A stretch of DNA of 63,305 bases, counting the filler, from Platydemus manokwari (lineage: Eukaryota), in NCBI GenBank assembly GCA_037951405.1. It is 5 parts of 5 records of this genome, joined end to end, with 100 filler letters (N's around TTAATTAATTAA, not from the genome) between each part and the next. Parts side by side here need not be neighbours in the genome. Positions count along the whole stretch, not along the records: positions 48,048 to 63,305 come from JBBMOY011313649.1; 4 more parts are not named here. The stretch is one strand, 5' to 3'. Below, piece by piece: positions 48,048 through 63,305 of the stretch (position 1 is its first letter; every line of letters begins with the position of its first letter). Position numbers and translations under genes: made by a program. The notes beneath the pieces are model-generated. The model was not told the DNA's origin, did not search any database, and worked only from the letters and a program-made list of their open reading frames with translations.

Positions 48048-49837
48048 TAAAATCACAAACGAATTATATCTAAGCATATTCTCGACGGTTTATAGAGCAC
48101 CACTCAATCTTGAGAAAAATATTTCAAAAATTATAACGAAAAGATTTATTGATTATAAAGATTTCTTGAATTATTATAACTGTAACCCAACTTTTAAGTG
48201 TACAAAACTATCAAAAAATCGATTCATTTATTTTTCGTTATTAATAAATATTTTATTTACCACATGTGCTCTATTTTTTAATTGGTGTAGTCCCTGTGTA
48301 AATCATTATTTTCATAGAGATAAAATCATCATAATCATCATCATTCATCATCTGTTTGAAAACAGTATGCCATGCATCATATATACAGAGACTGACAGGA
48401 ACAATAAGTAAACTTGTAAGACCATGGATGAGTCAGATGTAAAATAAAAACCTACATTAAATCCATTATCTACCCCGTTCTGCGCAAGGGCATATAAGAT
48501 GTCAGTTGGTTAAGGTTAACTTCTAACTTGATGGATGAAAAGAAATCATCAGATCAATAAATGTCGTAGATAGAGAAGACCAACATAAAAAATTTAACAT
48601 TAAGTTATTTTAAATTGTATATATTTATGCCTAATTAAGATTAACAATAAAAGCTCTCTGGAAAATTTTTTAAATTTATTTTAAAAATGTTTGATTTGTT
48701 TCTATTGATAAATAAGTTTCGAAAATCGCATAAATGAATTTTTCCATTGAATCTTCAATTTTAAATGAAGTAGTTATAAATACAAATTTATAAATATAAA
48801 TAAAATAATACAATATATAAAATATTATCAAAGATATACTCATAAACACAAATTTAAAATAATTGTAATAATAGAACACAAAAGTAAAACCTACCAAACA
48901 TTCAATAAAAGTAATTTGTTAAAAATTATCATTAAATTTGTTTTGGGATTGGAAATGATTTTGTTCTGCTGACTTTTGTGTTTGGAGATTGAACTGGAGA
49001 TTGATGGATTGGCGATATTTTTAAAAAAAATTGATTTGTGAATTTAAATCGGGAATAAATTATTTGGAATGCTATTTGATGGTGATGGATTTCACAAATG
49101 CTTTTTCACGTGTTGTTCATTAGAAATCTATCGCTATGATGACGAATAATCACAAAACCAATTGATAAACCAACAGGACATTCAAGAAAGAATAATTATG
49201 AGAGGCCGGTTGGGATAATTTGTGAAATGAATCTTGATATCAAAATAAGTAATGATTTAAAATATTAATAGCGAATATTAATAGATGATGATTCAGAAAA
49301 TAACGAAAAGATAAATCAAAATTCTTGATTCTCTTATCAAAAATTAATTTTCGGTAATTTCAACTAGTCTCGAAATATGATTTTTAAGCAGATTAAATGC
49401 AGAATTTTCTTGTCGTTTTTGACTATTATTGATTAGAATAGTTATTTCTTTTAATTTTCAAAAAAATAACGTCGAAGGCCATTGTAACCTAAATCTAGAA
49501 AACTTGGCATTAGTCTTGATCTATATCAGGCCTATAGCGCCTAATTGAGAAAGTTGATTTAAGGAAAGATAACGGCTTTATAAATTGATAACTTGGTTAA
49601 AAATGAGAAAAATCTTTTCCTGGTGGTTTTCAAGATTAAAAATGAGATTTCATGAATGAGTAGTAAAATTTAAAACAAATAGATTTATTAGAAACATTAA
49701 ATAAGGAATAAAAACACTTATTATGTAATTCTTATCAATTTTTATATCTGTCTATTGACAAACAAAGGTCAAGTGCTCTACGATTTCATCTATAATTTAC
49801 CAAACATGACAATAACATCATAATAATTAGAACTCTG

Positions 49838-49847
49838 ATGTCCACAA
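49838..49847 (+). CDS. PDX1: PDX1 exon 1 (micro-exon ATG TCC ACA A)
   Basis: ATG followed by GTAATC donor, CTAAT branch-like motif and TTTAG acceptor at 49887 (40-nt intron); phase joins in frame with exon 2. Confidence 0.7.
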
Positions 49848-52800
49848 GTAATCTGCTAATTTTTCATTATCGTTTAGATTTGTTTAGATTTAGCTCAATT
49901 CGGAACGTTCACTGTCAAGTCTGGCTTGGCACAGATGGCCAAAGGTGGATTGATTATGGATGTAGTTAATCCCGAACAAGCCCGTATAGCTGAAGAAGCA
50001 GGAGTATGATTTAATTTTTAAATTGATAAGAATACGTTCAACGGTATGAACAAATTGTAGATTATATTGCTGCGTGATTACTTTAAAATTATAACATTGC
50101 GAAAGCTTTATAATCGTGGTTGAATTATTAAAAATACTGTCTAATAAAACGGCCATCTATTCAAATATCTGTAACAGCGTATGTTGACACACATTATACA
50201 ATAACTTTAGCAACCATTAAAATGGTATAAAGTTATTTGATTATATTATTAACTCATTGATTGATTTCGTAAATTATATGAAGTAAATTTCCAAACATTC
50301 AATTCGACTAAATAGTTTTTACTTAAAGAAATTTTTAAGACAACTTATTTTAAATAAAACTGAATTTAATCAAATTTTTGATTTTAAAATTATTTATCGT
50401 GTCATAATTTTTAAAACAAACATCTAAATTAAGATTTTAAAAAATAAATTTTGGAAAATAAAATAAAATCAAGAATAAATTAAAGTTTAAAAAATATTAG
50501 ATAAATTTATGATTACATTAAATCCATTAACATTATAATTTTATTTCAGTAAATAAAGGAGCTTATAACAGGTGTAATGGAAGATTGTTGTTTCCGTTGA
50601 AAAAGATTGGATAAAACATGACATCAAATTAATATTTTAATTAATTATATTTTTGGAATAATTATGATGTTATCGCATGATTTAGTATTTCATAAGCAGA
50701 GTGCATTTATCAAAAAGGTCTCTTGTGTTTGTTATAAACGTGGAAATAATGCGAAATATATATTTTAATGTAAAGATTGTTATTATTATTACTATTATTA
50801 TTGTTATTCCTTTTATTATTGTCATTATTATTGTTATTTAGATTACTATTTCATGTATGTTGATATTAACAATATCCACACCTTTAAAAGTGGTATATAT
50901 TTAACATTCCATTATATTTTACAACAAATCAAAGACTTTCATAGAAATCTTTAAATGTGAATAAAGATCAGTCTCAATTTGAGATAAACTAATTCAGGCA
51001 TGTGCTGTGATGGCTCTTGAAAGAGTCCCAGCAGATATTCGCAAATTTGGAGGAGTTGCCCGGATGACAGATCCGCAAATAATCAAAGATATTATGAATG
51101 CAGTCACAATACCTGTCATGGCAAAAGTTAGAATTGGACATTTTGCAGAGGCACAAATCTTACAGGCCATTGGCGTTGATATGATTGACGAGTCAGAAGG
51201 TTGTTTAAATATTTACTGTTCTAGATATTGATATTTTGATATTTTTCAAATTGTTTTCAAGCATTTTTTGAAGTATTGCGAATGAAAATCTAAATCGAAT
51301 TTATATTTGAAATAATTATGAAGAAATTCACTCATTTTTCTGACATTTTATTACTTCATGAGTAAGTAAAATTTATGATTGTCTTTTAGAGTAATTTTTA
51401 CCGCACAATTTCCGTAGGTTTAGATATATTTTTATATCAATATTTTTAAATAGCTCAAGCTTTATTTGCGATTTGGCAAAGCCTTGGTACTCGAATAAAA
51501 TGCATCATATACATTATCCATAATCTCTTTAAATTTAAATTTGTAGATTTATTGTCAGTGATCTCTAACATTATATATATATATATATATATATATTCAT
51601 ACTTTTTAATTCTCTTTAAATTTTCACCAATTTTTTCATAATTTAAACAATATTTCCTTTCTGGTCATTTTATTTTAAAAGTTATCCTATGATCTTAAAA
51701 TTTTTTCTGATGATCTGCTCTGATCAGTAAAGGTCTAAGTATTCAAAAATTTAAGAAGGTATTCTTCTTTAGTTCTTAGTCCAGCAGACCCTTCGGATCA
51801 CGTCGATAAGACCAAGTTCACTATACCGTTTGTTTGTGGAGCTCGCGATCTCGGTGAAGCATTAAGAAGAATTAACGAAGGTGCAGCAATGATTCGAACC
51901 AAGGGAGAAGCTGGGACCGGAGATGTAATCGAAGCAGTCAGGCATGCTAAATCAATTAAACATAGCATTGAGGCTTTGCAAAACATGAATGAGAAAGAGT
52001 AAAAATTTATATTCCATTATAATAATGATTATATCTACATATTAGATAACATTAATTGATAATTGATACTACGTACATTAATTGATTATAAAACTTCGAA
52101 TTACTGATTCAAATCCACACATTGATTTTCTTAAGATTTTCCTATTTTGATTTTTCTAAAAGCTGAAGAACTTAACCAGAAATATTATACAATAAGAATC
52201 AATCCGAAACGAATAACAAATATTAAGTTATATAATCGATCTATGACGATAGGGAAAATGATCGGATTAATTCAAGGTGTCAGATTAATTTCTAAAACTG
52301 GCAGAGATATTAGAAAAAACAAATTAAATAATATTTATACTTTCGTCTTAATGATTAAATAATAATGGAATTTAATGAAAATCTGTGAAATATATTCTGT
52401 TTTTAAACTTCGTTCCAGAAATGAATTGTCATTTTTTCAAGATTAAATTTTAATAGTTATATCCCAGATAAATGATAAACGTAAGTAGAAAATATTTAAT
52501 AAACTTTATTATAATTTCGGTTCTAAATTTTTAGTTTTATATATTTTGGAATGATCTAAATGTTTCGAACTATTTCTAATATGATCTTTTAAATTAAAAC
52601 AAAAGTTTAATGATATAAAATGACCAACAAATTGACTTTTTTCTTAGACTGGAAGGTTATGCATCAATAATAAGAGTGCCGGTAGACTTAGTAAAAATGA
52701 CCAGAGATTTGCGAAAGCTCCCGGTCGTAAATTTTGCTGCTGGTGGATTAGGTAAGATGAAACAATTTTTATGCGATACATTTCTAATGATTCTGTTTAT

Positions 52801-54168
52801 TGATCAAAGCTGAACAAAACCAATATTTAATACTAGATAATTATTTAACCTGTTATTTAGCAACGCCAGCTGACGTGGCTCTTCTGATGCAACTTGGTGT
52901 GGAGGGAGTTTTTGTCGGTTCGGGAATATTCAAGTCAGATAATCCTAAAAAGAGAGCCGAAGCTATGGTTAAAGCAGTGACACATTTTAATGATGCTAAG
53001 ATCTTAGCAGAGATAAGTGAAAATCTGGGTGAAGCCATGGTAAGATTAAAAATAAATGATCACAGTTTATAAAGACGTAAAATGTATGTTGGTGATATTG
53101 GATGTTAGTTAAGAGGTCGTGATTTTCAAACCATCCCATGGGTGAACGATTGATTTAAAGTAATATCTAATACTAGTGAGTAGAAAGGATTATAAAACTA
53201 CTACATCGATGAACTACATGTTAGAGTTATCAATGGTTCAATTAGGAAACCCGCAAAACTGTACCGCATTAAAAATTTATTTGCTTATTTAAGAATGCTT
53301 GTCTTTCCACAAGAGTTCAAACCTTTCCTCCTTTCGTTAATTAAATTTTATATATTTAAAGTTATTATTTCTGTACAGGCCATGTCTTGCTACATAAAAA
53401 ACAATTAAATACATTCATGATAATTTAAAGTCTGAATGTTGCTATTCTTACCATAATGGACCAATCGCACCAGTATATAGTTATATATACATTACTATCA
53501 AAATGTTTTGAAATTCAATTGAAAAAAAATTAGAATGATAGTTCATCTATTTTAACAACTACATTTTCTTCATTGATAACTGAAGTGTGTAAAAATAATT
53601 CTCATTGTATAAATTTGAAAAGAAATTTATTTATCAATAAAGGCAACCTTATTTGACGGTTTTTATAATCAAATAATGTTCTGTTCAACTCTGATTATGG
53701 TTTTTGTACTATGTAGATAAAATCTTTAGGTTTATTTAATTCATAAAACAATCATGTCGTCATTTATACACTGCCTTTACTGTGATTGAGGAATCGATAA
53801 GTAAATTATTTGACACTGACTCTTGAACAAATCATTCGCAATCAGTGTCGATAATATTTGATGAAAATCTGATTCATTTCCAACTCCTTTAACATAAAAT
53901 AGTCCTCAGTACAATTTTTTGTGGCTGTACTGTAAATACTAAATACTTTCAGTTTATTTTTAACATGAAAGTTTTTGTTTGTAAATCTTATGTTTGTTTG
54001 ACTCTTTACCAAAACAACCTCAATGTTTATTTTTATTTTTCGTTCATTGATAGTATAAATAAATATTTATAATTAATTGAAGCTTTTAATGAATTTTTTA
54101 AAAATCAGGTTGGCATATCATGTGACAGTGTTGTTCAAAAGTGGAGTCTGAGAGAAGGCAAAGAATAA
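49838..54168 (+). CDS. PDX1: Pyridoxal 5'-phosphate synthase subunit PDX1/SNZ (PdxS), complete 7-exon gene, 298 aa: join(49838..49847,49888..50003,50998..51199,51773..51998,52648..52751,52861..53039,54109..54168)
   Basis: Hand-spliced exons total 897 nt with consistent phases and GT-AG ends: [68 protein letters not shown]...[34 protein letters not shown]...[40 protein letters not shown].../...[40 protein letters not shown]...[24 protein letters not shown]. All hallmark SNZ motifs are present. Confidence 0.96.
49888..50003 (+). CDS. PDX1: PDX1 exon 2
   Basis: Encodes [34 protein letters not shown]; ends at GTATGA donor. Not in the ORF track. Confidence 0.93.
50998..51199 (+). CDS. PDX1: PDX1 exon 3
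   Basis: TTCAG acceptor; [15 protein letters not shown]...MAKVRIGH...IDESE; overlaps ORF 51007..51231. Confidence 0.95.
51773..51998 (+). CDS. PDX1: PDX1 exon 4
   Basis: TTTAG acceptor; VLSPAD...[33 protein letters not shown]...; GTAAAA donor. Confidence 0.95.
52648..52751 (+). CDS. PDX1: PDX1 exon 5
   Basis: CTTAG acceptor; [34 protein letters not shown]; GTAAGA donor. Confidence 0.93.
52861..53039 (+). CDS. PDX1: PDX1 exon 6
   Basis: TTTAG acceptor; [26 protein letters not shown]...LGEAM; GTAAGA donor. Confidence 0.95.
54109..54168 (+). CDS. PDX1: PDX1 terminal exon 7
   Basis: ATCAG acceptor; [19 protein letters not shown] completes the conserved GEAMVGI motif; AATAAA about 40 nt downstream. 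Confidence 0.85.
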   Translation, partial: VGISCDSVVQKWSLREGKE

Positions 54169-54375
54169 GCATAACTCATATTATCAATTATTGAAAATGA
54201 TTTTATAAAATAAATAATTTTTTGTTGAAAAAAATATAATTTTCTCGATTGAGTTTTGATGAAAATGAGAAATTTTTGAATATACTGAAAATAATATTTT
54301 TATTGCAAATTGTAATGTAGGGAAAGAATTGCAAGCTATATTTATTACACAGTGTATTTATTTTTACTCTTCAGA

Positions 54376-55350
54376 CAAGGTGACTCACAACGGACCCCTC
54401 AAAACTTCCATTTTAAAAATTTTTCAATTTCAAATTTATTTTCAAAATGTCCGTCATTTTTATTCATGCGACGACGAATTCGCTTCCCAATAATTTTAAA
54501 ATAACAATTCCCCTACACATCTTGTCATCAATGTCATGGAATTCTTCACAGATTATCTTATCAAGTACAACTGTGATTTGAGGATGATTCTGAGACACCA
54601 CTTTCTAAAAATGATCCAAAAGAAAGATATCACATAACAATAAATTTGGTAATCTCTAGGAAAAATGCCAAATTTTCCCGATTACCTGGTGATCAATTCA
54701 ACAATTTGTAAATTATGATTCAAATATTCTATGGCTGATCAGTAGAAATATCTTTGTTTGCTCATCCCCCATAAGCACATTTTAGCATTATAGGGCTTAT
54801 AAAAACACATTTCTGACCATGGAAAGATAATTTTTACTGGTGACAATTGTCTTGATGAAACAAAATACAGTAATTTCTTGTACTGATATACCCAATCAAA
54901 AAATGACACCGAGTTGATTCATGTATTTTGCCTGAAAACAATTTTGGCTTTCATCAGATCAATGATCACGGTTATGATGATTAATTGATCCATTAAGATA
55001 GAGTACGACTTCATCGGTGAAAATTACTTTTTGAATATGTAGAGAATCTTGTTGTAGTAAAGAAACGAAATCTTTGCAGATAAACAGTCTTCGATCAGTG
55101 TTATCCTCGTTAAACCCCTGAAGCTAATAAAGTTATAGCTGTAGAGACACAAATTCATTTTATTAAAATTTTGAAATTCTAAGATTCTTAGATGAATTAG
55201 AAAGTATCACTCATTTCATTCATACCATTTATAGCTGAGCCATAATGGTTGACTTAATTATCATCACGATGTTTGTCGAGTGCTTTTTAGTGGGCATTTC
55301 CAGTTAATTCAGATCTCTCATTTAATATTGAATTTTATAAAAAAATTAAA
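54376..55350 (-). mobile_element. Decayed mariner-like (DD37D/DD41D-type) transposase, related to 15722..16402 (ends approximate)
   Basis: FTDEVVLYLNGSINHHN (first catalytic D); RLPNLLLCDIFLLDHF*KVVSQNHPQ...CEEFHDIDDKMCR; KRIRRRMNKNDGHFE. Confidence 0.8.
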
Positions 55351-57829
55351 ATACAATCTCCCCCTTTGGCATCTTGATATTGTTGAAATTGAAAAGACGC
55401 ACACAAATATAATAATCAATAATAAAATGAATTTGAATTTTAAAATTAGTAGAATTTATTTCGATACAACCAGTTTAAAATAGCTTATAAATTCTTACAG
55501 ATTCTAACAGGTAAAATTTCCAGTGGAACAGCTAGTATATAAATAACTTATTACAAAAAAACATAATTTGGCCATGAAGTTCACTTAATATAAACATTAA
55601 ACAGCACCATTAAAAATTATGATTCTCACGGTCAACTCTAAATGTCCAGTAAATGATAAGTCATTATTTTAAATGATATCAGTCAACGTGATTGAATACA
55701 GATCAACTTTGCTCATATGACCTTATATTTCGAATACATTATCATTAAAACGAAAGGCTCGATAATTGTATCAATCATTGAATGTTTTGATCCAATGATT
55801 GATACATGAATTACATAAACTTCTATCTAAAATTGCGTCTATTAAAACAGATTCACATGAGGTCTGTTTTGAAATGTCATATATTTAATGTAGAAAATAC
55901 GCATCTATCAAATTCAATGTGAAGCCCACCAAATTGTTAGTAATGAGGTTCAATATTTAAGAATAATTGACTTTGGTGGGTGATTTCAATAAAATTCGTG
56001 TAAAAAAAAGTCAAAAGAAATTTAAAAGTAAATTCGTCATCATAATTGATAATAAAATACTGAATATATTTCAACCTTTAATATTAATGTTGTTAGTAGA
56101 TGAGAATTGTTTTAGTTAATAAAAATAGATAAATGAACAACCGATATTAAGCTCAAAATATTTGGTTAGTAATTCTTAGAGTGATATACTTAATATTGGT
56201 CGAGTTGAATAAAATAAAATAGAAATAAACCTATGATGTTTTTGTCATCAGAGATCTTCATAACTTAACAAAATGCTGAAAAAATGTTGACTATTTTTAT
56301 GAGTGTGTCATATTGTAGACGTATCTACTATAAGAAAAAAATAACATCGTTAGCCGACATAGTTTCAACTCAAAATGTAACATTTGATAAGAATGTTCTG
56401 CAATCTTGAGTAAAAAATTTGTAGTCAATTCTTTGATATACGAGCGAACTAAGTTAATTTAAATACTTGATTAATTTCAAATTGCTTGAAAATTCTTTCG
56501 GCGTTTTATATAGTTAACGGATAATTTGTTTCGTTTAATATCAATAAAAATTTGTGTTTGACATTTTTAAATATTACTGTCAAATGTATTCATATTGAAA
56601 TGACCAATGCGATAGTTAAAAGATAATATGTAATTTAAAAAAGACTGCTGATAATCTACAAAATCACAGCTGAAGATACATTAACAATTCTAGTTTATCT
56701 TGAAATAAGTCAATTCAATATCACAATATTCAAGGGCCTTAATGATATTATGAGAATATTATTACTCTATATTAAAGTCCGATAATTCATCTATATTTAA
56801 GAAATATTGTTTAATACGCATCCCAATCAAAATTGCATTGTATTTGTGATTTACTTCAGTTTATTATGTGTTTCACAGTGTGAATCTACATCTTGACAAT
56901 GGCTGAATTACAGCATATATTCCACAGTTGTAATCTATGATTTACCTCTGTAAATCTATGAGTAGAATTCATCATAATTATATATATTCATTCATGTATT
57001 TTAAAACTCGTAACATATAAGCCTGGAAAACATTTAACAATTTGACTAATTCGTAAGGTCAGTCAGCTAATAAATTATTTTGGTTATTGAGATAAAAACA
57101 TAATTGCATAAAGTTGTGTAATAGTTAATATCAAAATTAAATATTAAAAACATTCTTTAAATATTTAGAAAATAAAGGAAAATATTTTCACGATTTCCAT
57201 GGGATAGATGACTGGAAAATATTATCTAAATACAGTAATCATTCTCAAGAACGACAATAACTGCTATCGAAATGTGTCAAATGCGAAATTGTTAATGCTT
57301 TAATTTTTAACGACATAGTGGTCAAAATTGTTGATTCAATAATAATACGAGTTAAGTTTACATGATTATTAAAATAAAATTTCTACCAAATCCATAGTTC
57401 ATATGTTGGAACTGTTGGTAATGAAGTCGTTCTCAAATTTCAAATTTTTGAATAACGACATTCAATTTGGTTTCTTTGTTAATTTGAGAGTCATTTTCAA
57501 ATTGGAAAAATTAATTTTGGTATCTTTAAATAAATTATTTCAGTATTAAATACAAATGAAGAAATGAATTTAACACTTAGTTTAAATCACTGAAGATCGA
57601 CAAATTGATTTTCGTTAAGATTATTTAATCTGAAAAGGAACCAAACAAATTCCAATATTAATAATGATTACGAAAAGACTAATTATTTTCATAAAGGATA
57701 GTCATTTCCAAAAACGTACTACTAGTATTCGTAATAAATTAATTTGATTAAATTAATAAAAGAGTCATTCAAGATAATTTTAATCTAATGATTTCTCGTG
57801 TATTATTTAATCTCAAAATTTATTTATAT

Positions 57830-58335
57830 TGTTGTATAGATCCCAAATTAACCAAAAGGGTCATAGGAACCAAGCAAATAATCGTAAAAAGAGTTGACAT
57901 ACACAGGTTCAATACGCACATGTGCCGTCAACCAAACAGATTTGTTTCAATATTAATCCATATTTAAAAGCTAAGAATAGACAAGCACATACCTAAAAAT
58001 GACAGCAAACACAAATATTCGCCAATAACATAAGATGTGTGAGGAAAATTTCAAGCAGACCTATCTACGAACAGATTCAGAAAATGGAAAAAAAAGACCC
58101 GTGACATCAAGCAGATACACCAATAGGTCTATAAAAAAGGTTGAGTTCCGTGAGTAACTGTCCGTCTTTGTGGTTCCTAAGTTGAGTTCTTAAATTCGTG
58201 TAATTTTCAGTAACCAGTCTGTTTGGTTACTTAAATTCTGTCTTTGACTTTTAGGTGCTAATCCCATTTTATGTGATAAACTGTCGTTGATTATAAAGAG
58301 GCTTAATTATAGTTGTTGTGATTAAGATTGTAACA
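57830..58335 (+). mobile_element. Possible solo LTR
   Basis: TGTT...AACA ends, internal CTATAAAAAAGG TATA box, locally higher GC; no target-site duplication seen. Confidence 0.4.
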
Positions 58336-60701
58336 TTTTGGGTAATATAATTTTCAGTATGATTGTTGATTAATACTCAACAATATTTTGACTTAAAATT
58401 CCATTATAGATGAAAAAGAGTAAAAACAGTTAAATTCTTTTAGAAACAACAACAATCACAATATTAAAGTCAAAGCAATAATTTGAGCATAAATGTCTTG
58501 AATATTCGGATTCACAAAACATGTAGAATGACCCACAATTATATCATAAGTTTGGAAGGCATTTATAACACCTCAAATAAAATCTCAAAGCAACTGATCA
58601 GGCTTCATCCATCATCAAATAAATATAAAGTATTTCATTATTAATTTTTATATTTATCTTGCAATTTTTTTCTTGGATTGTCCTATTTTGAATTCTAACT
58701 AGAAATCAGAAGAAATCAAGAATCAATTTTTTATCACAATAAAGTATTTTAAATATTTAGTTTTATTTTTGAGGATTTTTATCAATTACTGAAAGTTGAT
58801 TTATCTACATGGTTCAGTTAACATTTTATGATGTCGAACCGGACCTAAATAGAATTGCTAAACAAAGTTCCTGTTTTAATCATAAAACTTCTTTATACCT
58901 TTTGATTTTTTTTAATTTAATTTTGTTATTATAAATCGACTTAGCAAACTCCTGACATGTTTAATAATCTAATATTTTTTTTAACAAGATTTAGAGTATC
59001 AATCTCATATCTGAAATTTTCATTAGAAAATTTATAATGAAGTTCCATTTTAGCAGACTTTTTTGAAAATTTTGAAAACAAGTAATCTTTAAAATTGACG
59101 TTATGCGATTCTCAAAATTTCTCTAGCATTCACAAATAAATAACAACTCAGCGAATTTAATCAGTAATTATTTATTTGGCTCATTTTGAGATTTATTTTC
59201 TTTTTTCTAGTTTAGTGACAAATCTAAAATTAGATCAGTGTGATACTATTAGTATTAGCATTTGTATAAAAGCTTAATTATTTTGTAGTCGCAAATAATT
59301 TTATGAACTGCTGAATGTGTATTAATTGTAAATATTCAAAGAAAATACATTTATTAAAATAAATGTTAAAAAGGTATAGGTAGAAAAAATTTAATCAATT
59401 TCCAACATGCCATAAGAGCAGGAGTAATATACGCACAAATTAAAATGATTCTTATTTGTGCGTATATTTTTAAATTTAAGATCACCAAATGATTTCAAGA
59501 AAACGATATGATGTAGTATTAATTTTAATGATAGTGATTCATCTTATACAATTGACAACAGAGATGTTTTGTAAAAACTTGATTAGTCAAAGCTGGAGTC
59601 GAGGCCAATTTACAAAATACATGAAATGTGGACGAGTACTGTAACTATTAAATCTGGCTTCACCATCTCTAACATCATGTTCCTGAGTTTCATCTTAGCG
59701 TTACCAATTGTTTTACCTAGTTTCGTTCATGTTTTGTTAACGTTAAATCACTGAAAATCGTTCATTTTAATAAAAGATGCACTATTACTATTAATAGAAA
59801 TTATATCTAAAGTTATTTTAGTCTACATCTTTGGAAATCATTAATTTTTTTAGTGAAATAAACTTGTATGAAATATAAAAATTATGCATTATTAAAATCC
59901 CTAAATTTTTAATATCTTTGTAAACTGATGTACAATAAATGTTTTACAAAAAGATAGTCAACAATTTCCGTAATTCCAAGAATCCATGATACGTAGTGTT
60001 AGATTAAATAAAATTTTGATAAAATATCATGCAGACATTCAATTATAATTTAAATATCTTTTAAATTTGTCAAGGCATTAAATTTAGAGAAAACCCATAG
60101 CATGACTACGTAAATACATTCAGTAAAAATACAACAACAAATGTTACTTAAATGGTATCTATTTCAAATCAAATGTCAAATAATATAATAATCATTAATA
60201 ATTCATCTACATTCAAGAAAGTGTATTTAATATATTAGTCATGAGATCTAACTATCCATGAAAAATAACAGTACAAATTGAATATAAGGTTAAACATATG
60301 ATAGTAATCAAAAATAAAATTTCAAATGTCAATTAATCCCCTTAATATTAGATCATATAAAATTAAAAATAGCTATTAATTAAATATCAAGAATTCAAAT
60401 TTGAGAAGAATAAGGAAAAATAACTATTCAAATATTATTTTTATCAAATATTGTTTATATAAATCAATATCTATAATCACCATGTAATCTGATGACTAAT
60501 TCTCATTACTTTTAATTTTTTTTAATTAAACAACTGTGATTTTAACATTTATTTTTCTTGATTTTATTTTATGATAAATAATTATTTTAAATTTATAGAG
60601 TTCTCATGTAAATTTTAGATTTAGAAAAATTTCCAAAAAGTAATAAATAATTCATTAAAATATTTATTTATCAAATTCAAATAATCATTTTTATATTTAC
60701 T

Positions 60702-61583
60702 TTATGCTGCAATAATCATACGTATTTTTTCAATACCCATTGAAGCGACATTCCAATGTTCTTCAGCTGTAATGTTTTCAGCATAAAGTTCCTTCATTTG
60801 CTTAATAAGTGCTCCTTTTGGCACATAATAAACAATATTTGTTACATCCGGTCTGAGTACTGTAGCAGCTGCTTTTCTCAGACAATCTGATGTCAATTCA
60901 TCGGTATCACCGAGGAAATCAGAAAACAAAATCGACATACCATGCCAAGAATTATAACAAATCTGTACGACAAATGTGCAGTAAATACCAGTTTCTTCAT
61001 TTGAAATGGATATTAGTCAGCTGATTCCCTTTGAGCGTTTTTTCACATAGAAATGGAATTTATTTTTGCTCTCAATTTCTTCACTATTTTTACACAGCAT
61101 TTTTCTAACTGCATCTTTACCAAAAACTTCATACATCTCCACACCGGAAGAAGGTGCAGAAATGTTTTCAAATCCAAAACTCGCATACATTTTCTCCAAT
61201 CCGAAAATAGATCTTTGAAAAACCAATTTCAAAAATTTGACATTGTTCTCATCTGCAATTCTAAATAAATGATGCATCAATCTTTTGCCCAAACCTTTGC
61301 CACGAAGATCGGGTGATACAAAAAAGTCATCAATATAGTAACCGTAACCGTGCAGAATGGAGTATTCTTCTATATACAAAATGTAACCACATGCTTTTCG
61401 AACATTTTCATTTTCTTCAAATAAAATTAGACATTCGAAGTCATTATTTTTAAATGATTGTAACATAGTTGGTTCGTCCATTAAAAAATATTCCGTCATT
61501 AATCCATGGTATTGGACCAAATTATTGGTGAACCTAAATACCGTGGATATATCATCGATACTCGCTTTGCAAATCGTGTACAT
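60702..61583 (-). CDS. GNAT acetyltransferase, spermidine/spermine (diamine) N-acetyltransferase-like; 188 aa to an in-frame TGA (61017..61019), 293 aa if read through
   Basis: Acetyl-CoA motif A IDDFFVSPDLRGKGLGKRLM, SSAT-like YSILHGYGYYIDDF, and MYASFGF. ORF 60702..60938 is in the same frame and the 26 codons between are stop-free. Confidence 0.8.
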
Positions 61584-63076
61584 ACAACTTGAAAATTATG
61601 ATTTGTAACTTATTAAAACAATGTTAAATATTGATAATTAAAAAATTAATGAATTATTTTAATATATAGTTTTAGTTTGTGTATGTCATAATCATCATTT
61701 CCTTGTAAAAAATTTATCGGCAGATAATAAATAGCCAGTTGATTTCAAGAAAGTGGATTTAATTTTAAAATTTTTCTTAGAACAACTTAGAAAGGTAACT
61801 CTGTAATTGTTCGTGTGTTTAATTTACTTTCCGATTTAATGTTTATTAAAAAACATAACATTTTTATTTTAAGGTAAGTATCATAATGAAATAGATTATT
61901 ATAAATAATTACATAAAATTTAATTTTACGTAACATCTTCAAGATTAAATAGGTTCTCCTCAAACAAAAACATTTATATTTTCCTTAATTTTTGATAGCG
62001 GGTCAGTTAATGAATGAATGAAAATATTTATTTTTTTAGTTGACATTGAACAAATTGTTTTATTTTTGCTAGTTACATCATGCAATAGAAATTTTGTTAT
62101 TGATTAGCGAACAAGGTGTAATAAATTTGTATTTTGTATTCAAACTATTGAATAAAGGAGAAAAATGCTTGGTTCATTTGAAATATGCGAACTTTTTTAA
62201 GATCAACTGTTATGAATATTTAAAAAGTAGTTTTTCTAAGAATCTATATTTTAAATCTAATATAGATTTATGAGTGAAAATGAAATTTATTATAGTTCGT
62301 TAGGGAACTTTAAGGATCCTGTAGTTTCTTCTAATATAAATGTTGAGACTAATCTCATACAAAAATGCTTACCAAATATAAAACCTATTTATATTCAAAT
62401 AATGTGTTCAATAATTAAAAATCACAGTATATAAATATTTACATAATCAAAAATCGAAATCTGTGCTATTTCCCATCGATTCAATCACTATATATTCAAA
62501 CTATCAATCTTCGATAATGATTTAGAAAAAAATCATTCAAAAATCAATCGTTTATTAACTAATTAACTGATTTTTATTACACTGGTTTGATGTTTATTAT
62601 TATGATTGAATATAATAGAATCGAGTAAAAAATTTGTAATTAATTATAAACATAAACAAATAAAGAAAATTAATGTATTAATGGCTTTAAGAGAATTTCA
62701 ATGGTAAGCGTATTTAAATACCCGTGACTATATGGACTATTAACTATGGACTAGTAACATAAAAAATAGAATGGAATTTATTATAAATCTAGTTTTCAGA
62801 CAATTCTAATAAAAAGAGGAAGTCTGCAAGACAACAGGCTAACACAAATGACACGTTTATTAAATAAGTTGATTCTCGGTCATTTCATATGACGCTTCTA
62901 ACCCAAGCCCACCCCAAATTCTCGGTTCACTCGAATTTGTTGTGAACTTGAGTTAGAAGGGTCATATTACCACCACTCTATGGATAAGAAAATTGGTTGA
63001 TGGTAAAATGTAGAATTAAAAATAATAAAAAAAATAAAATAAAAAGCAATTTCTAATTAAAAAATATTCATTATAA

Positions 63077-63305
63077 ATGAACGAACCAAATTTGGAATTT
63101 CACTGTGAAGTATGTAATAAATATTTTGTAAATAAAACAGGATTAATATCTCATGAAAAATCTAACAAACATAAAGCATTATATAATGCATCTATTAATA
63201 ACAATGAAATAACTTTACATGATAATACATGTGATATTATTAAATTTGTTAAATTCATTAAACATTCTCCAGAAAATAAAAATATAATTTCATATATTTC
63301 AGAAT
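63077..63305 (+). CDS. C2H2 (JAZ/U1-like spacing) zinc-finger ORF, 3'-truncated by window end
   Basis: MNEPNLEFHCEVCNKYFVNKTGLISHEKSNKHKALY...; C-x2-C-x12-H-x5-H; frame open for 76 codons to the window end. Confidence 0.7.
   Translation, partial: MNEPNLEFHCEVCNKYFVNKTGLISHEKSNKHKALYNASINNNEITLHDNTCDIIKFVKFIKHSPENKNIISYISE

What the first reader, a model, noticed from the sequence alone, without database searches (positions are those of the whole stretch)
49838..54168. Intact, intron-containing vitamin B6 synthase gene (PDX1/SNZ) in an apparently animal genome
Seen: complete 298-aa, 7-exon gene that the ORF track shows only in fragments; it keeps the residues equivalent to B. subtilis PdxS Asp24 (MDV), Lys81 (MAKVR) and Lys149 (IRTKGE). 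Known: PDX1+PDX2 make PLP de novo in bacteria, archaea, fungi, plants and apicomplexans, while vertebrates, insects and most nematodes lack it; patchy animal occurrences are known (retention in some invertebrates, horizontal acquisition in cyst nematodes). Inference: this animal may be a B6 prototroph. AT-rich spliceosomal introns and a neighbouring transposon related to one on another contig argue against bacterial contamination.
Basis: partly seen in the sequence, partly recalled or inferred. Interest (0 to 1): 0.72.

Follow-up and report, generated by a model that had tools for sequence, protein, structure and literature searches.

The report
Intact intron-bearing PDX1 vitamin B6 gene
This AT-rich eukaryotic contig carries a complete, seven-exon PDX1 (vitamin B6 synthase) gene of the inherited animal type rather than a bacterial import, which makes it a real but ordinary member of a gene family already known from sponges and other invertebrates.

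Summary
Seven GT-AG exons on the + strand (49838-54168) splice to a 298-aa PDX1/SNZ protein. It has no stops, is co-linear with PdxS, and keeps all tested catalytic residues and 122 of 125 near-invariant family columns. Only the first mini-exon is uncertain.

The gene is native and eukaryotic:
- Codon third-position GC matches the neighbouring gene.
- No prokaryote among 185,579 species genomes exceeds about 72% identity.
- In ML trees it sits (100/99 support) in a clade of intron-bearing PDX1 genes from metagenome contigs.
- Two of those contigs carry animal hallmark genes next door, an Abl kinase and a caspase-3/7.
- Four of its six introns coincide exactly, phase included, with introns of those relatives.

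This is vertical inheritance, not the bacterial transfer reported for cyst nematodes.

Three things remain open:
- The host cannot be named; "animal" is likely, not proven.
- No RNA data exist for this locus.
- PDX2 is not in this piece, although it lies head-to-head beside PDX1 in every relative. Only 1.8 kb upstream is available.

B6 prototrophy is therefore plausible but unshown. Animal SNZ/SNO genes have been known since 2001, so novelty is low.

A side observation may be more interesting. The neighbouring GNAT gene has a conserved in-frame TGA followed by a constrained 104-codon extension.

The parts
49838..49847 (+). Proposed first coding exon (ATG + 7 nt, phase 1). It is tentative, because ATG 49656 with a donor at 49660/49663 is an alternative.
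   Evidence: The donor is GTAATC. There is an in-frame stop at 49875-49877 in the exon-2 frame, so an upstream exon is required.
49848..49887 (+). Intron 1 (40 nt, GT..AG, phase 1, after residue 3.33). Not shared with the relatives, which have a phase-1 intron 5 codons further on.
49888..50003 (+). Exon 2: N-terminal helix and strand with Asp28 (MDV).
   Evidence: Pfam SOR_SNZ 3.5e-11, profile positions 2-33
50004..50997 (+). Intron 2 (994 nt, phase 0, after residue 42). Same position and phase as in L090.
50998..51199 (+). Exon 3: contains Schiff-base Lys85 (MAKVR) and Asp106.
   Evidence: SOR_SNZ 3.1e-35; PdxS equivalog 4.6e-36
51200..51772 (+). Intron 3 (573 nt, phase 1, after residue 109.33). 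Shared with L086, L087, L089 and L090.
51773..51998 (+). Exon 4: His119, Arg141/142, Arg151, Lys153 (IRTKGE).
   Evidence: SOR_SNZ 4.5e-35; PDB PdxS 2.3e-30
51999..52647 (+). Intron 4 (649 nt, phase 2, after residue 184.67). Unique to this gene.
52648..52751 (+). Exon 5 (ends in ...[10 protein letters not shown]).
   Evidence: SOR_SNZ 4.4e-4, profile positions 180-207; co-linear with relatives
52752..52860 (+). Intron 5 (109 nt, phase 1, after residue 219.33). Shared with all four relatives, and with many metagenome exon fragments that begin at ATPADV.
52861..53039 (+). Exon 6: phosphate-binding GSGIFKS region.
   Evidence: PdxS equivalog 1.1e-26. There are 968 fragment hits; the best is P0331 at 92% identity, ending at the same exon boundary.
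53040..54108 (+). Intron 6 (1069 nt, phase 0, after residue 279). Shared with L086, L087 and L089.
54109..54168 (+). Exon 7: C-terminal tail with the ..QKW..RE.. motif also found in relatives, then stop TAA.
54209..54214 (+). AATAAA, 41 nt after the stop. A possible polyadenylation signal (inference).

Best explanation
This is a native, vertically inherited eukaryotic PDX1/SNZ gene. It encodes the synthase subunit of the glutamine-dependent PLP synthase of the DXP-independent vitamin B6 pathway. It belongs to the same intron-bearing lineage as the PDX1 genes found on animal contigs. The encoded (beta/alpha)8-barrel protein should condense ribose 5-phosphate, glyceraldehyde 3-phosphate and ammonia into pyridoxal 5'-phosphate via Schiff bases on Lys85 and Lys153. 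The ammonia would normally come from a PDX2/SNO glutaminase partner encoded elsewhere in the genome.

Shown here: gene integrity, family membership, conserved catalytic residues, native composition, eukaryotic (animal-type) phylogenetic position, and shared intron positions.

Inferred: enzymatic activity, expression, the existence of PDX2, an animal host, and B6 prototrophy.
For: - Intact 7-exon model, all GT-AG, 298 aa.
- SOR_SNZ/PdxS profile hits exon by exon, in order, and hits to solved PdxS/SNZ1/PDX1.3.
- 122 of 125 columns that are >=95% conserved in 82 other PdxS/PDX1 are kept. The three differences are conservative, and two of them are shared with the eukaryotic relatives. All eight catalytic or phosphate-site residues checked are present.
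- GC3 of PDX1 is 0.338 against 0.328 for the neighbouring GNAT gene, and the introns are 21-26% GC like the surroundings.
- Run X1's contigs cover gene and flanks without differences, at an even k-mer depth of about 12-14.
- The best of 78 full-length prokaryotic PdxS, taken from a scan of 185,579 species genomes, is 71.6% identical. The hits are taxonomically scattered.
- Spliced PDX1 genes of L086/L087/L089 are 72-75% identical.
- ML trees (LG+C20): the window plus intron-bearing relatives form a clade at 100/99. The window plus L090 join at 95/89.
- L086 lies beside an Abl orthologue (E 3.5e-82 to human ABL1, cap-SH3-SH2 aligned). L090 lies beside a caspase-3/7-like gene with QACRG.
- Intron positions 42.00/phase 0, 109.33/1, 219.33/1 and 279.00/0 coincide exactly with introns of the relatives. 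The chance of >=4 of 6 coinciding is about 8e-9.
- The closest fragment, P0331 (92% identity), ends at the same exon boundary and runs into AT-rich codons.
Against: - No PDX2/SNO is detectable anywhere in the 15.3-kb piece (best tblastn E>1). The same queries find PDX2 exons in L086 and L089 at 1e-11 to 1e-48. In all relatives PDX2 lies head-to-head 0.2-3.1 kb upstream.
- No RNA run holds the locus, so splicing and expression are unverified.
- The window branch is long (0.35-0.45, against 0.10-0.18 for three of the relatives), so its grouping with L090, itself on a long branch (0.28), could partly be long-branch attraction.
- No labelled fungal, choanoflagellate or protist PDX1 was available, so 'animal-type' rests on two neighbour genes of unlabelled metagenome contigs.
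- The start exon is ambiguous.
Confidence: 0.8

Rival explanations
1. The contig belongs to a non-animal eukaryote (protist, fungus, symbiont or food organism), either as the sequenced organism itself or as a co-sequenced contaminant. In that case a PDX1 gene is entirely expected.
For: - The organism is coded, and only one DNA run holds the locus.
- None of the window's proteins or close relatives carries a name.
- Relatives turn up only on short metagenome contigs.
- The tree had no non-animal opisthokonts, so a sister of animals would also fall in this clade.
- Before L090 was added, the window was sister to all three relatives.
- Shared intron positions can predate animals.
Against: - The window groups with L090 (next to a caspase-3/7 gene) at 95/89, inside a clade whose other branch holds L086 (next to Abl).
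- The decayed element downstream looks most like mariner Transposase_1 clusters from arthropods and molluscs (weak).
- The best solved relatives of the GNAT neighbour are animal diamine acetyltransferases (weak).
- Depth is even along the gene and its flanks.
Confidence: 0.25
2. The gene was acquired horizontally from a bacterium and later gained introns, as reported for cyst nematodes.
For: - Overall identity to the best prokaryotes (up to 71.6%) is nearly as high as to the eukaryotic relatives (72-75%).
- Such a transfer is documented for Heterodera and Globodera (PMC4901422, which cites Craig et al. 2008).
Against: - No bacterial or archaeal lineage stands out among 593 confirmed matches.
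- The clade with intron-bearing eukaryotic genes has 100/99 support.
- Four of six introns are at positions and phases identical to those genes.
- The C-terminal ..QKW..RE.. tail is shared with them.
Confidence: 0.03
3. PDX1 is retained without a functional PDX2. It would then be a decaying relic, a PDX1.2-like non-catalytic paralogue, or an enzyme using free ammonia or serving another role. In that case the organism is not a B6 prototroph.
For: - PDX2 is missing from the position it holds in every relative examined, at least within the 1.79 kb available upstream.
- The terminal branch is long.
Against: - All catalytic residues and 122 of 125 near-invariant columns are kept, unlike the divergent plant PDX1.2, which scores far lower in the same exon.
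- The reading frame is intact across seven exons in a 26% GC genome rich in stop codons.
- A 92%-identical exon exists in a related organism.
- In L090 the PDX2-PDX1 gap is about 3.1 kb, longer than what the piece shows.
Confidence: 0.08

Closest known systems
Sponge SNZ/SNO genes (Suberites domuncula SNZERR; Seack et al. 2001, Biochim Biophys Acta 1520:21, cited in PMC7954711 and PMC3078890)
   Same: Both are animal-encoded, intron-containing PDX1 of the DXP-independent pathway. The relatives found here (L086, L087/88, L089, L090-92) have PDX2 head-to-head beside PDX1. From memory, that is also the arrangement described for the sponge pair.
   Different: Here PDX2 is not within the 1.79 kb upstream or the 9.1 kb downstream. 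The genome is far more AT-rich and the introns are longer. Two introns (3.33 and 184.67) are lineage-specific, and two introns of the relatives (69.00 and 158.33) are absent. The sponge sequence itself could not be fetched for comparison.
Bacterial/archaeal PdxS (TIGR00343; e.g. B. subtilis PdxS, PDB 2nv2) and yeast SNZ1, Arabidopsis PDX1.3
   Same: Same family, length and co-linearity. Same catalytic Lys/Asp/Arg set. Identity is 56-72% to the prokaryotic PdxS. Yeast SNZ1 and Arabidopsis PDX1.3 were matched by exon 4 only (E about 1e-28 and 1e-26); their overall identity was not measured.
   Different: The gene is split by six spliceosomal introns. It groups with eukaryotic intron-bearing genes, not with any prokaryote.
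Horizontally acquired SNZ/SNO of cyst nematodes (Heterodera glycines, Globodera; PMC4901422, citing Craig et al. 2008 Mol Biol Evol 25:2085)
   Same: Both are PDX1 in an animal lineage whose relatives mostly lack it, and both carry introns.
   Different: Those genes are reported as bacterial-like acquisitions. This one shares intron positions and clade with other eukaryotic (animal-contig) PDX1 genes and has no bacterial nearest neighbour.
Plant PDX1.2 pseudoenzyme
   Same: Same fold family.
   Different: PDX1.2 lacks catalytic residues and scores about 1e-16 against exon 4, versus about 1e-26 for PDX1.3. The window protein keeps every catalytic residue tested.

Membership tests
PDX1/PdxS/SNZ PLP synthase subunit (Pfam PF01680 SOR_SNZ; NCBIfam TIGR00343) | Full-length, co-linear match to the family profile | tested here: met
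   Exons 2-5 cover SOR_SNZ positions 2-207 in order. Exons 3, 4 and 6 match PdxS equivalog positions 31-97, 99-171 and 210-268. The search was exon by exon, so no single piece reaches the whole-protein cut-offs of NCBIfam. Pfam's 27-bit cut-off is passed by exons 2, 3 and 4.
PDX1/PdxS/SNZ PLP synthase subunit (Pfam PF01680 SOR_SNZ; NCBIfam TIGR00343) | Catalytic residues: Schiff-base Lys81 and Lys149, Asp24, Asp102, and the second-site His115/Arg137/Arg138/Arg147 (B. subtilis numbering) | tested here: met
   Lys85, Lys153, Asp28, Asp106, His119, Arg141, Arg142 and Arg151 are all present. 122 of 125 near-invariant columns are kept.
PDX1/PdxS/SNZ PLP synthase subunit (Pfam PF01680 SOR_SNZ; NCBIfam TIGR00343) | (beta/alpha)8 barrel fold and dodecamer assembly | not tested
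   No structure was predicted. The joined protein has no reference to hand to the fold tool, and sequence identity of about 60-70% to solved PdxS makes the fold a safe inference.
PDX1/PdxS/SNZ PLP synthase subunit (Pfam PF01680 SOR_SNZ; NCBIfam TIGR00343) | Glutaminase partner PDX2/PdxT/SNO in the same genome | tested here: inconclusive
   None is in window 48048-63305. The relatives all have it adjacent.
PDX1/PdxS/SNZ PLP synthase subunit (Pfam PF01680 SOR_SNZ; NCBIfam TIGR00343) | Expression and PLP synthase activity | not testable with these tools
   No RNA run holds the locus.
Vertically inherited animal-type PDX1 | Monophyly with intron-bearing PDX1 of animal contigs, to the exclusion of prokaryotes | tested here: met
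   Support is 100/99 in both careful trees. The animal nature of L086 and L090 is inferred from the Abl and caspase-3/7 neighbours. No labelled non-animal eukaryote except one plant was in the tree.
Vertically inherited animal-type PDX1 | Shared intron positions and phases | tested here: met
   Four of six are shared (42.00/0, 109.33/1, 219.33/1, 279.00/0).
Vertically inherited animal-type PDX1 | Head-to-head PDX2-PDX1 gene pair | tested here: inconclusive
   PDX2 is absent from the 1.79 kb upstream that the piece holds. The gap is 0.2-0.3 kb in L086, L087 and L089, but about 3.1 kb in L090.
Bacterium-derived (HGT) PDX1 as in cyst nematodes | The nearest relatives are bacterial | tested here: not met

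The most novel reading that the evidence does not exclude
The host is an animal of a lineage assumed to need dietary B6. It has kept the ancestral metazoan PDX1 under strong constraint while breaking the otherwise conserved head-to-head PDX2-PDX1 pair. If PDX2 is truly gone, PDX1 would work with another ammonia source or serve a non-canonical role.
Probability: 0.1. Interest if true: 0.5.

Novelty: new member of a known kind. Interest (0 to 1): 0.27.

Why it matters
Textbooks and many reviews state that animals cannot make vitamin B6 (for example PMC7954711). Each well-documented animal-encoded PDX1 refines the picture of where the pathway was kept and where it was lost.

Here the gene is clearly native. 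Its intron positions tie it to other animal-contig PDX1 genes, which supports patchy retention from the animal ancestor over repeated acquisition.

Practically, it flags this organism as a candidate B6 prototroph. That matters for defined culture media and for reading host-symbiont nutrition. The phenomenon itself has been known since the sponge SNZ/SNO work, and neither the partner gene nor expression is shown, so the finding is confirmatory rather than surprising.

Tried and rejected
- The look-up of sequencing runs gave one coded DNA run and no RNA. Laying it shows only that its contigs match.
- The 1.84-billion representative search with exon 4 returned mostly odd fragments at 60-75% identity. 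PDX1 collapses into very few 50% clusters, so this was useless for a tree.
- P0127 (86% over 58 aa) turned out to be a frameshifted archaeal gene. P0307 and similar 'short ORFs on long contigs' are frameshifted bacterial pdxS-pdxT genes in long-read assemblies. Both were false leads for 'eukaryotic exons'.
- A profile word search with full-length homologues plus the exons (A2) was flooded by near-identical Agathobacter PdxS and wasted one search.
- Three cluster look-ups gave no organism names for any eukaryotic relative.
- Accession numbers of the samples are in no held paper.
- A degenerate DNA pattern for the lineage-specific peptide of exon 6 found nothing in JGI metagenomes. No DNA of the closest relative (P0331) could be had, so no dN/dS for PDX1 was possible.
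- Pfam and PDB searches of the putative transposase fragments found nothing.
- An intron that would remove the in-frame TGA of the GNAT gene was tried and rejected. The only GT..AG options delete conserved residues.
It was assembled only inside scripts from window.fa, to align it with sequences already fetched.
Full report
**1. The observation**

Reading 49600-54400 and rebuilding the model in a script gives seven + strand exons:
- 49838-49847
- 49888-50003
- 50998-51199
- 51773-51998
- 52648-52751
- 52861-53039
- 54109-54168

Together they make an 897-nt reading frame of 298 codons plus TAA. Every intron begins GT and ends AG. Intron lengths are 40, 994, 573, 649, 109 and 1069 nt. Introns are 21-26% GC, exons 43.5%, and the whole piece 26.3%.

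The joined protein was put together only inside scripts from window.fa and compared with sequences already fetched. It was not sent to any search or fold tool.

**2. Family**

Exons 2, 3, 4 and 5 match Pfam SOR_SNZ at consecutive profile positions 2-33, 34-100, 102-174 and 180-207. The E-values are 3.5e-11, 3.1e-35, 4.5e-35 and 4.4e-4. Exons 3, 4 and 6 match the NCBIfam PdxS equivalogs.

Exon 4 matches solved PdxS, yeast SNZ1 and Arabidopsis PDX1.3 at 1e-23 to 2e-30. It matches the plant pseudoenzyme PDX1.2 only at about 1e-16.

I aligned the model with 82 other PdxS/PDX1 proteins. It keeps 122 of the 125 columns that are at least 95% conserved. The three exceptions are V>L, A>V and I>M, and the last two are shared with the eukaryotic relatives. 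It also has Asp28, Lys85, Asp106, His119, Arg141, Arg142, Arg151 and Lys153. These correspond to B. subtilis Asp24, Lys81, Asp102, His115, Arg137, Arg138, Arg147 and Lys149; the numbering is from my own knowledge of that protein.

The gene is therefore a catalytically complete PDX1, not a pseudoenzyme.

**3. One weak point of the model**

The exon-2 frame is closed by a stop at 49875-49877, so the start must come from an upstream exon.

It works, but ATG 49656 with a donor at 49660 or 49663 also splices in phase. That alternative has a GTAAAA donor and an intron of about 225 nt.

L087, L089 and L090 also have a phase-1 intron just before the conserved GT..VK motif. A short 5' exon is therefore normal for this lineage, but which one is used here needs RNA.

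**4. Native or foreign?**

Third-codon-position GC is 0.338 in PDX1 and 0.328 in the neighbouring GNAT gene.

The Logan contigs of the only run holding the locus cover 48900-54800 without a single difference. Their k-mer depth is even, at about 12-14. The contigs break only at two simple repeats. This run may be the source of the assembly, so it is not independent support.

I scanned one genome for each of 185,579 bacterial and archaeal species with exon 4. This gave 593 confirmed relatives. The best 80 are 64-78% identical in that exon and taxonomically scattered: methanogens, Chloroflexota, Bacillota, candidate phyla and others. Over the full length, 78 of them are 55.7-71.6% identical to the model. 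No donor lineage stands out.

**5. Finding the true relatives**

A word search with exon 6 alone returned 968 short proteins. Many of the best have unrelated residues, then ATPADV...GEAM/GEPM, then unrelated residues again. These are exons with the same two boundaries as our exon 6, called as ORFs on eukaryotic contigs.

The closest is P0331, 92% identical, from ENA sample ERZ27256860. It ends at the same boundary and runs into AT-rich codons. No DNA was retrievable for it.

Several 'short ORF on a long contig' hits were traps. They were frameshifted bacterial or archaeal pdxS genes in long-read assemblies.

Real eukaryotic loci were fetched:

| Locus | Source |
|---|---|
| L086 | 464-kb contig |
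| L087/L088 | metagenome contigs (50.8 and 33.2 kb) |
| L089 | 3.7-Mb contig |
| L090-L092 | a 1.35-Mb contig plus two 'TARA ... METAG' scaffolds; the protein is indexed in 502 blocks of the collection |

All carry a multi-exon PDX1. All have a PDX2/SNO gene on the opposite strand immediately upstream.

**6. What kind of organisms are these relatives?**

No source gives a name.

L086 carries, 2 kb downstream of PDX1, an SH3-SH2-tyrosine-kinase gene. It aligns from the N-terminal cap through the SH2-kinase linker with human ABL1 at E 3.5e-82, far better than with Src-family kinases.

L090 carries a gene that aligns with caspase-7 and caspase-3 at about 1e-20, including the QACRG active site.

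An Abl orthologue and a true effector caspase are animal hallmarks; this is established knowledge, not tested further here. I therefore take L086 and L090 to be animal contigs. The Tara record names and the very wide occurrence of L090's gene suggest a reef animal such as a coral. That is a guess.

**7. Intron map**

Exon junctions of the relatives were placed by requiring GT..AG, co-linearity and best similarity. Positions are in residues of our model, followed by phase.

| Gene | Intron positions / phase |
|---|---|
| Window | 3.33/1, 42.00/0, 109.33/1, 184.67/2, 219.33/1, 279.00/0 |
| L086, L087, L089 | 69.00/0, 109.33/1, 158.33/1, 219.33/1, 279.00/0 |
| L090 | 42.00/0, 69.00/0, 109.33/1, 158.33/1, 219.33/1 |

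Four of our six introns coincide exactly, phase included, with introns of relatives. The expected number of chance coincidences is 0.04, and P is about 8e-9. The simplest history has two parts:
- An ancestral gene had introns at 42, 69, 109.33, 158.33, 219.33 and 279.
- In this lineage two were lost and two gained.

This excludes a recent bacterial origin. It does not by itself prove an animal host, because old introns can be shared beyond animals.

**8. Trees**

The first tree had 78 prokaryotic PdxS, one plant PDX1 and the three first relatives. It used LG+C20+F+G4 with ultrafast bootstrap and SH-aLRT support. The window and the three relatives form a clade at 100/99, with the window as sister to them. 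Its terminal branch is 0.45, against 0.10-0.18 for theirs.

The second tree added L090 and used 35 prokaryotes. The five intron-bearing genes again form a clade at 100/99. The window joins L090 at 95/89, and L086/L087/L089 join at 97/80.

Animal contigs therefore sit on both sides of the basal split, and the window falls inside. There are three limits:
- The prokaryotes were pre-selected as the best matches to our exon 4, which is conservative.
- The window and L090 are the two longest branches of the clade.
- No fungal, choanoflagellate or protist PDX1 could be included, because every attempt to obtain labelled eukaryotic sequences failed.

I put the probability of an animal host at roughly 0.7.

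**9. The partner**

In L086, L087 and L089 the PDX2 start lies 0.2-0.3 kb from PDX1. In L090 the gap is about 3.1 kb.

In the window, tblastn with four PDX2 pieces finds nothing better than E = 1.2 anywhere in 48048-63305. The same query finds PDX2 exons in L086 and L089 at 1e-11 to 1e-48.

Only 1.79 kb upstream of PDX1 is in the piece. PDX2 may therefore lie just beyond the edge, elsewhere in the genome, or be lost. This is the main gap between 'has PDX1' and 'is a B6 prototroph'.

**10. Comparison with the known**

Animal SNZ and SNO genes were described in the sponge Suberites domuncula in 2001 (Seack et al., cited in PMC7954711 and PMC3078890). Cyst nematodes carry SNZ/SNO genes regarded as bacterial acquisitions (PMC4901422, citing Craig et al. 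2008).

The present gene is of the first kind. It is a new member of a known kind. It is worth noting in an annotation and as a lead for nutrition studies, but it is not surprising to a specialist.

**11. Surroundings**

- Downstream of PDX1, k-mer depth rises to 22-32 at 54022-54612, with many loose ends.
- Minus-strand ORF fragments at 54467-55206 have no Pfam or PDB match. A language-model search puts one of them nearest to mariner Transposase_1 clusters from arthropods and molluscs, at score 0.90. A decayed mariner-like element is likely but not shown.
- At 61583-61017 (-) lies a GNAT acetyltransferase. Its best solved relatives are animal diamine acetyltransferases. Its only homologues among 5.8 billion proteins are three unnamed metagenome proteins at 84, 72 and 53% identity.
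- L001 is 78% identical in DNA over 900 nt of this gene region.

**12. A side observation worth a follow-up**

The GNAT frame ends in TGA. The next 104 codons, down to TAA at 60704-60702, are in the same frame. The same holds in L001 and in the much more distant L003. In all three the context is TGA CTA AT.

Between the window and L001, the stretch after the TGA has pN 0.119 against pS 0.488, a dN/dS of about 0.16. Conservation begins directly at the TGA, 25 codons before the first ATG.

No SECIS-like element was found at E up to 5 in 60000-61100, nor at gathering score in the whole piece. No acceptable intron removes the stop.

UGA followed by CUA(G) is a context known to favour readthrough (bioRxiv 10.1101/2021.04.18.440353). 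Conserved programmed stop-codon readthrough is my favoured reading, ahead of selenocysteine. This was followed up only in part.

Noticed in passing
window 61583-60702 (- strand); L001:62-943; L003:181-1080: The GNAT acetyltransferase ORF (188 aa) ends in TGA and is followed, in the same frame, by 104 further codons. These are conserved as protein in two diverged metagenome relatives that have the same in-frame TGA and the same TGA-CTA-AT context. After the TGA, pN is 0.119 against pS 0.488 (window vs L001). Conservation starts right at the TGA, before any ATG. No SECIS was detected and no plausible intron removes the stop. This looks like conserved stop-codon readthrough, or less likely selenocysteine.
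   Followed up: partly
L086:7310-8809; L087:7855-9217; L089:6465-7338; L090:3085-8158 (also L088, L091, L092): In every eukaryotic relative fetched, PDX2/SNO lies on the opposite strand directly upstream of PDX1, as a head-to-head pair with a gap of 0.2-3.1 kb. The window piece shows no PDX2 in the 1.79 kb available upstream.
   Followed up: yes
window 54022-54612 and 50279-50672; ORF fragments 54467-55206 (-): These two stretches have about double the k-mer depth of their surroundings, and many contigs of the run end or start there, so they are dispersed repeats. The minus-strand fragments just downstream of PDX1 resemble a decayed mariner-type transposase, but only by a language-model lead (0.90). 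There is no Pfam or PDB hit.
   Followed up: partly
window 63077-63304 (+): An open frame starting with ATG encodes a C2H2 zinc finger of the zf-met/JAZ type (E 8e-7). It is cut off by the right edge of the piece.
   Followed up: no
L085:7363-8903; L002:10001-10491: Many 'short PdxS ORFs on very long contigs' in the protein collection are frameshifted bacterial or archaeal pdxS genes in long-read metagenome assemblies, not eukaryotic exons. This is a trap when hunting for intron-bearing homologues by ORF length.
   Followed up: yes
window 50771-50844 and 51562-51607: An ATT-rich imperfect tandem tract and a (TA)n microsatellite lie inside introns 2 and 3. They are the only places where the run's contigs break within the gene.
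   Followed up: no
L086:12161-15069: An Abl-family tyrosine kinase gene (cap, SH3, SH2 and kinase; about 60% identical to human ABL1 in the N-terminal half) sits 2 kb downstream of PDX1 on an unnamed 464-kb metagenome contig. L090 has a caspase-3/7-like gene 4.5 kb downstream of its PDX1. Both mark these contigs as animal.
   Followed up: partly
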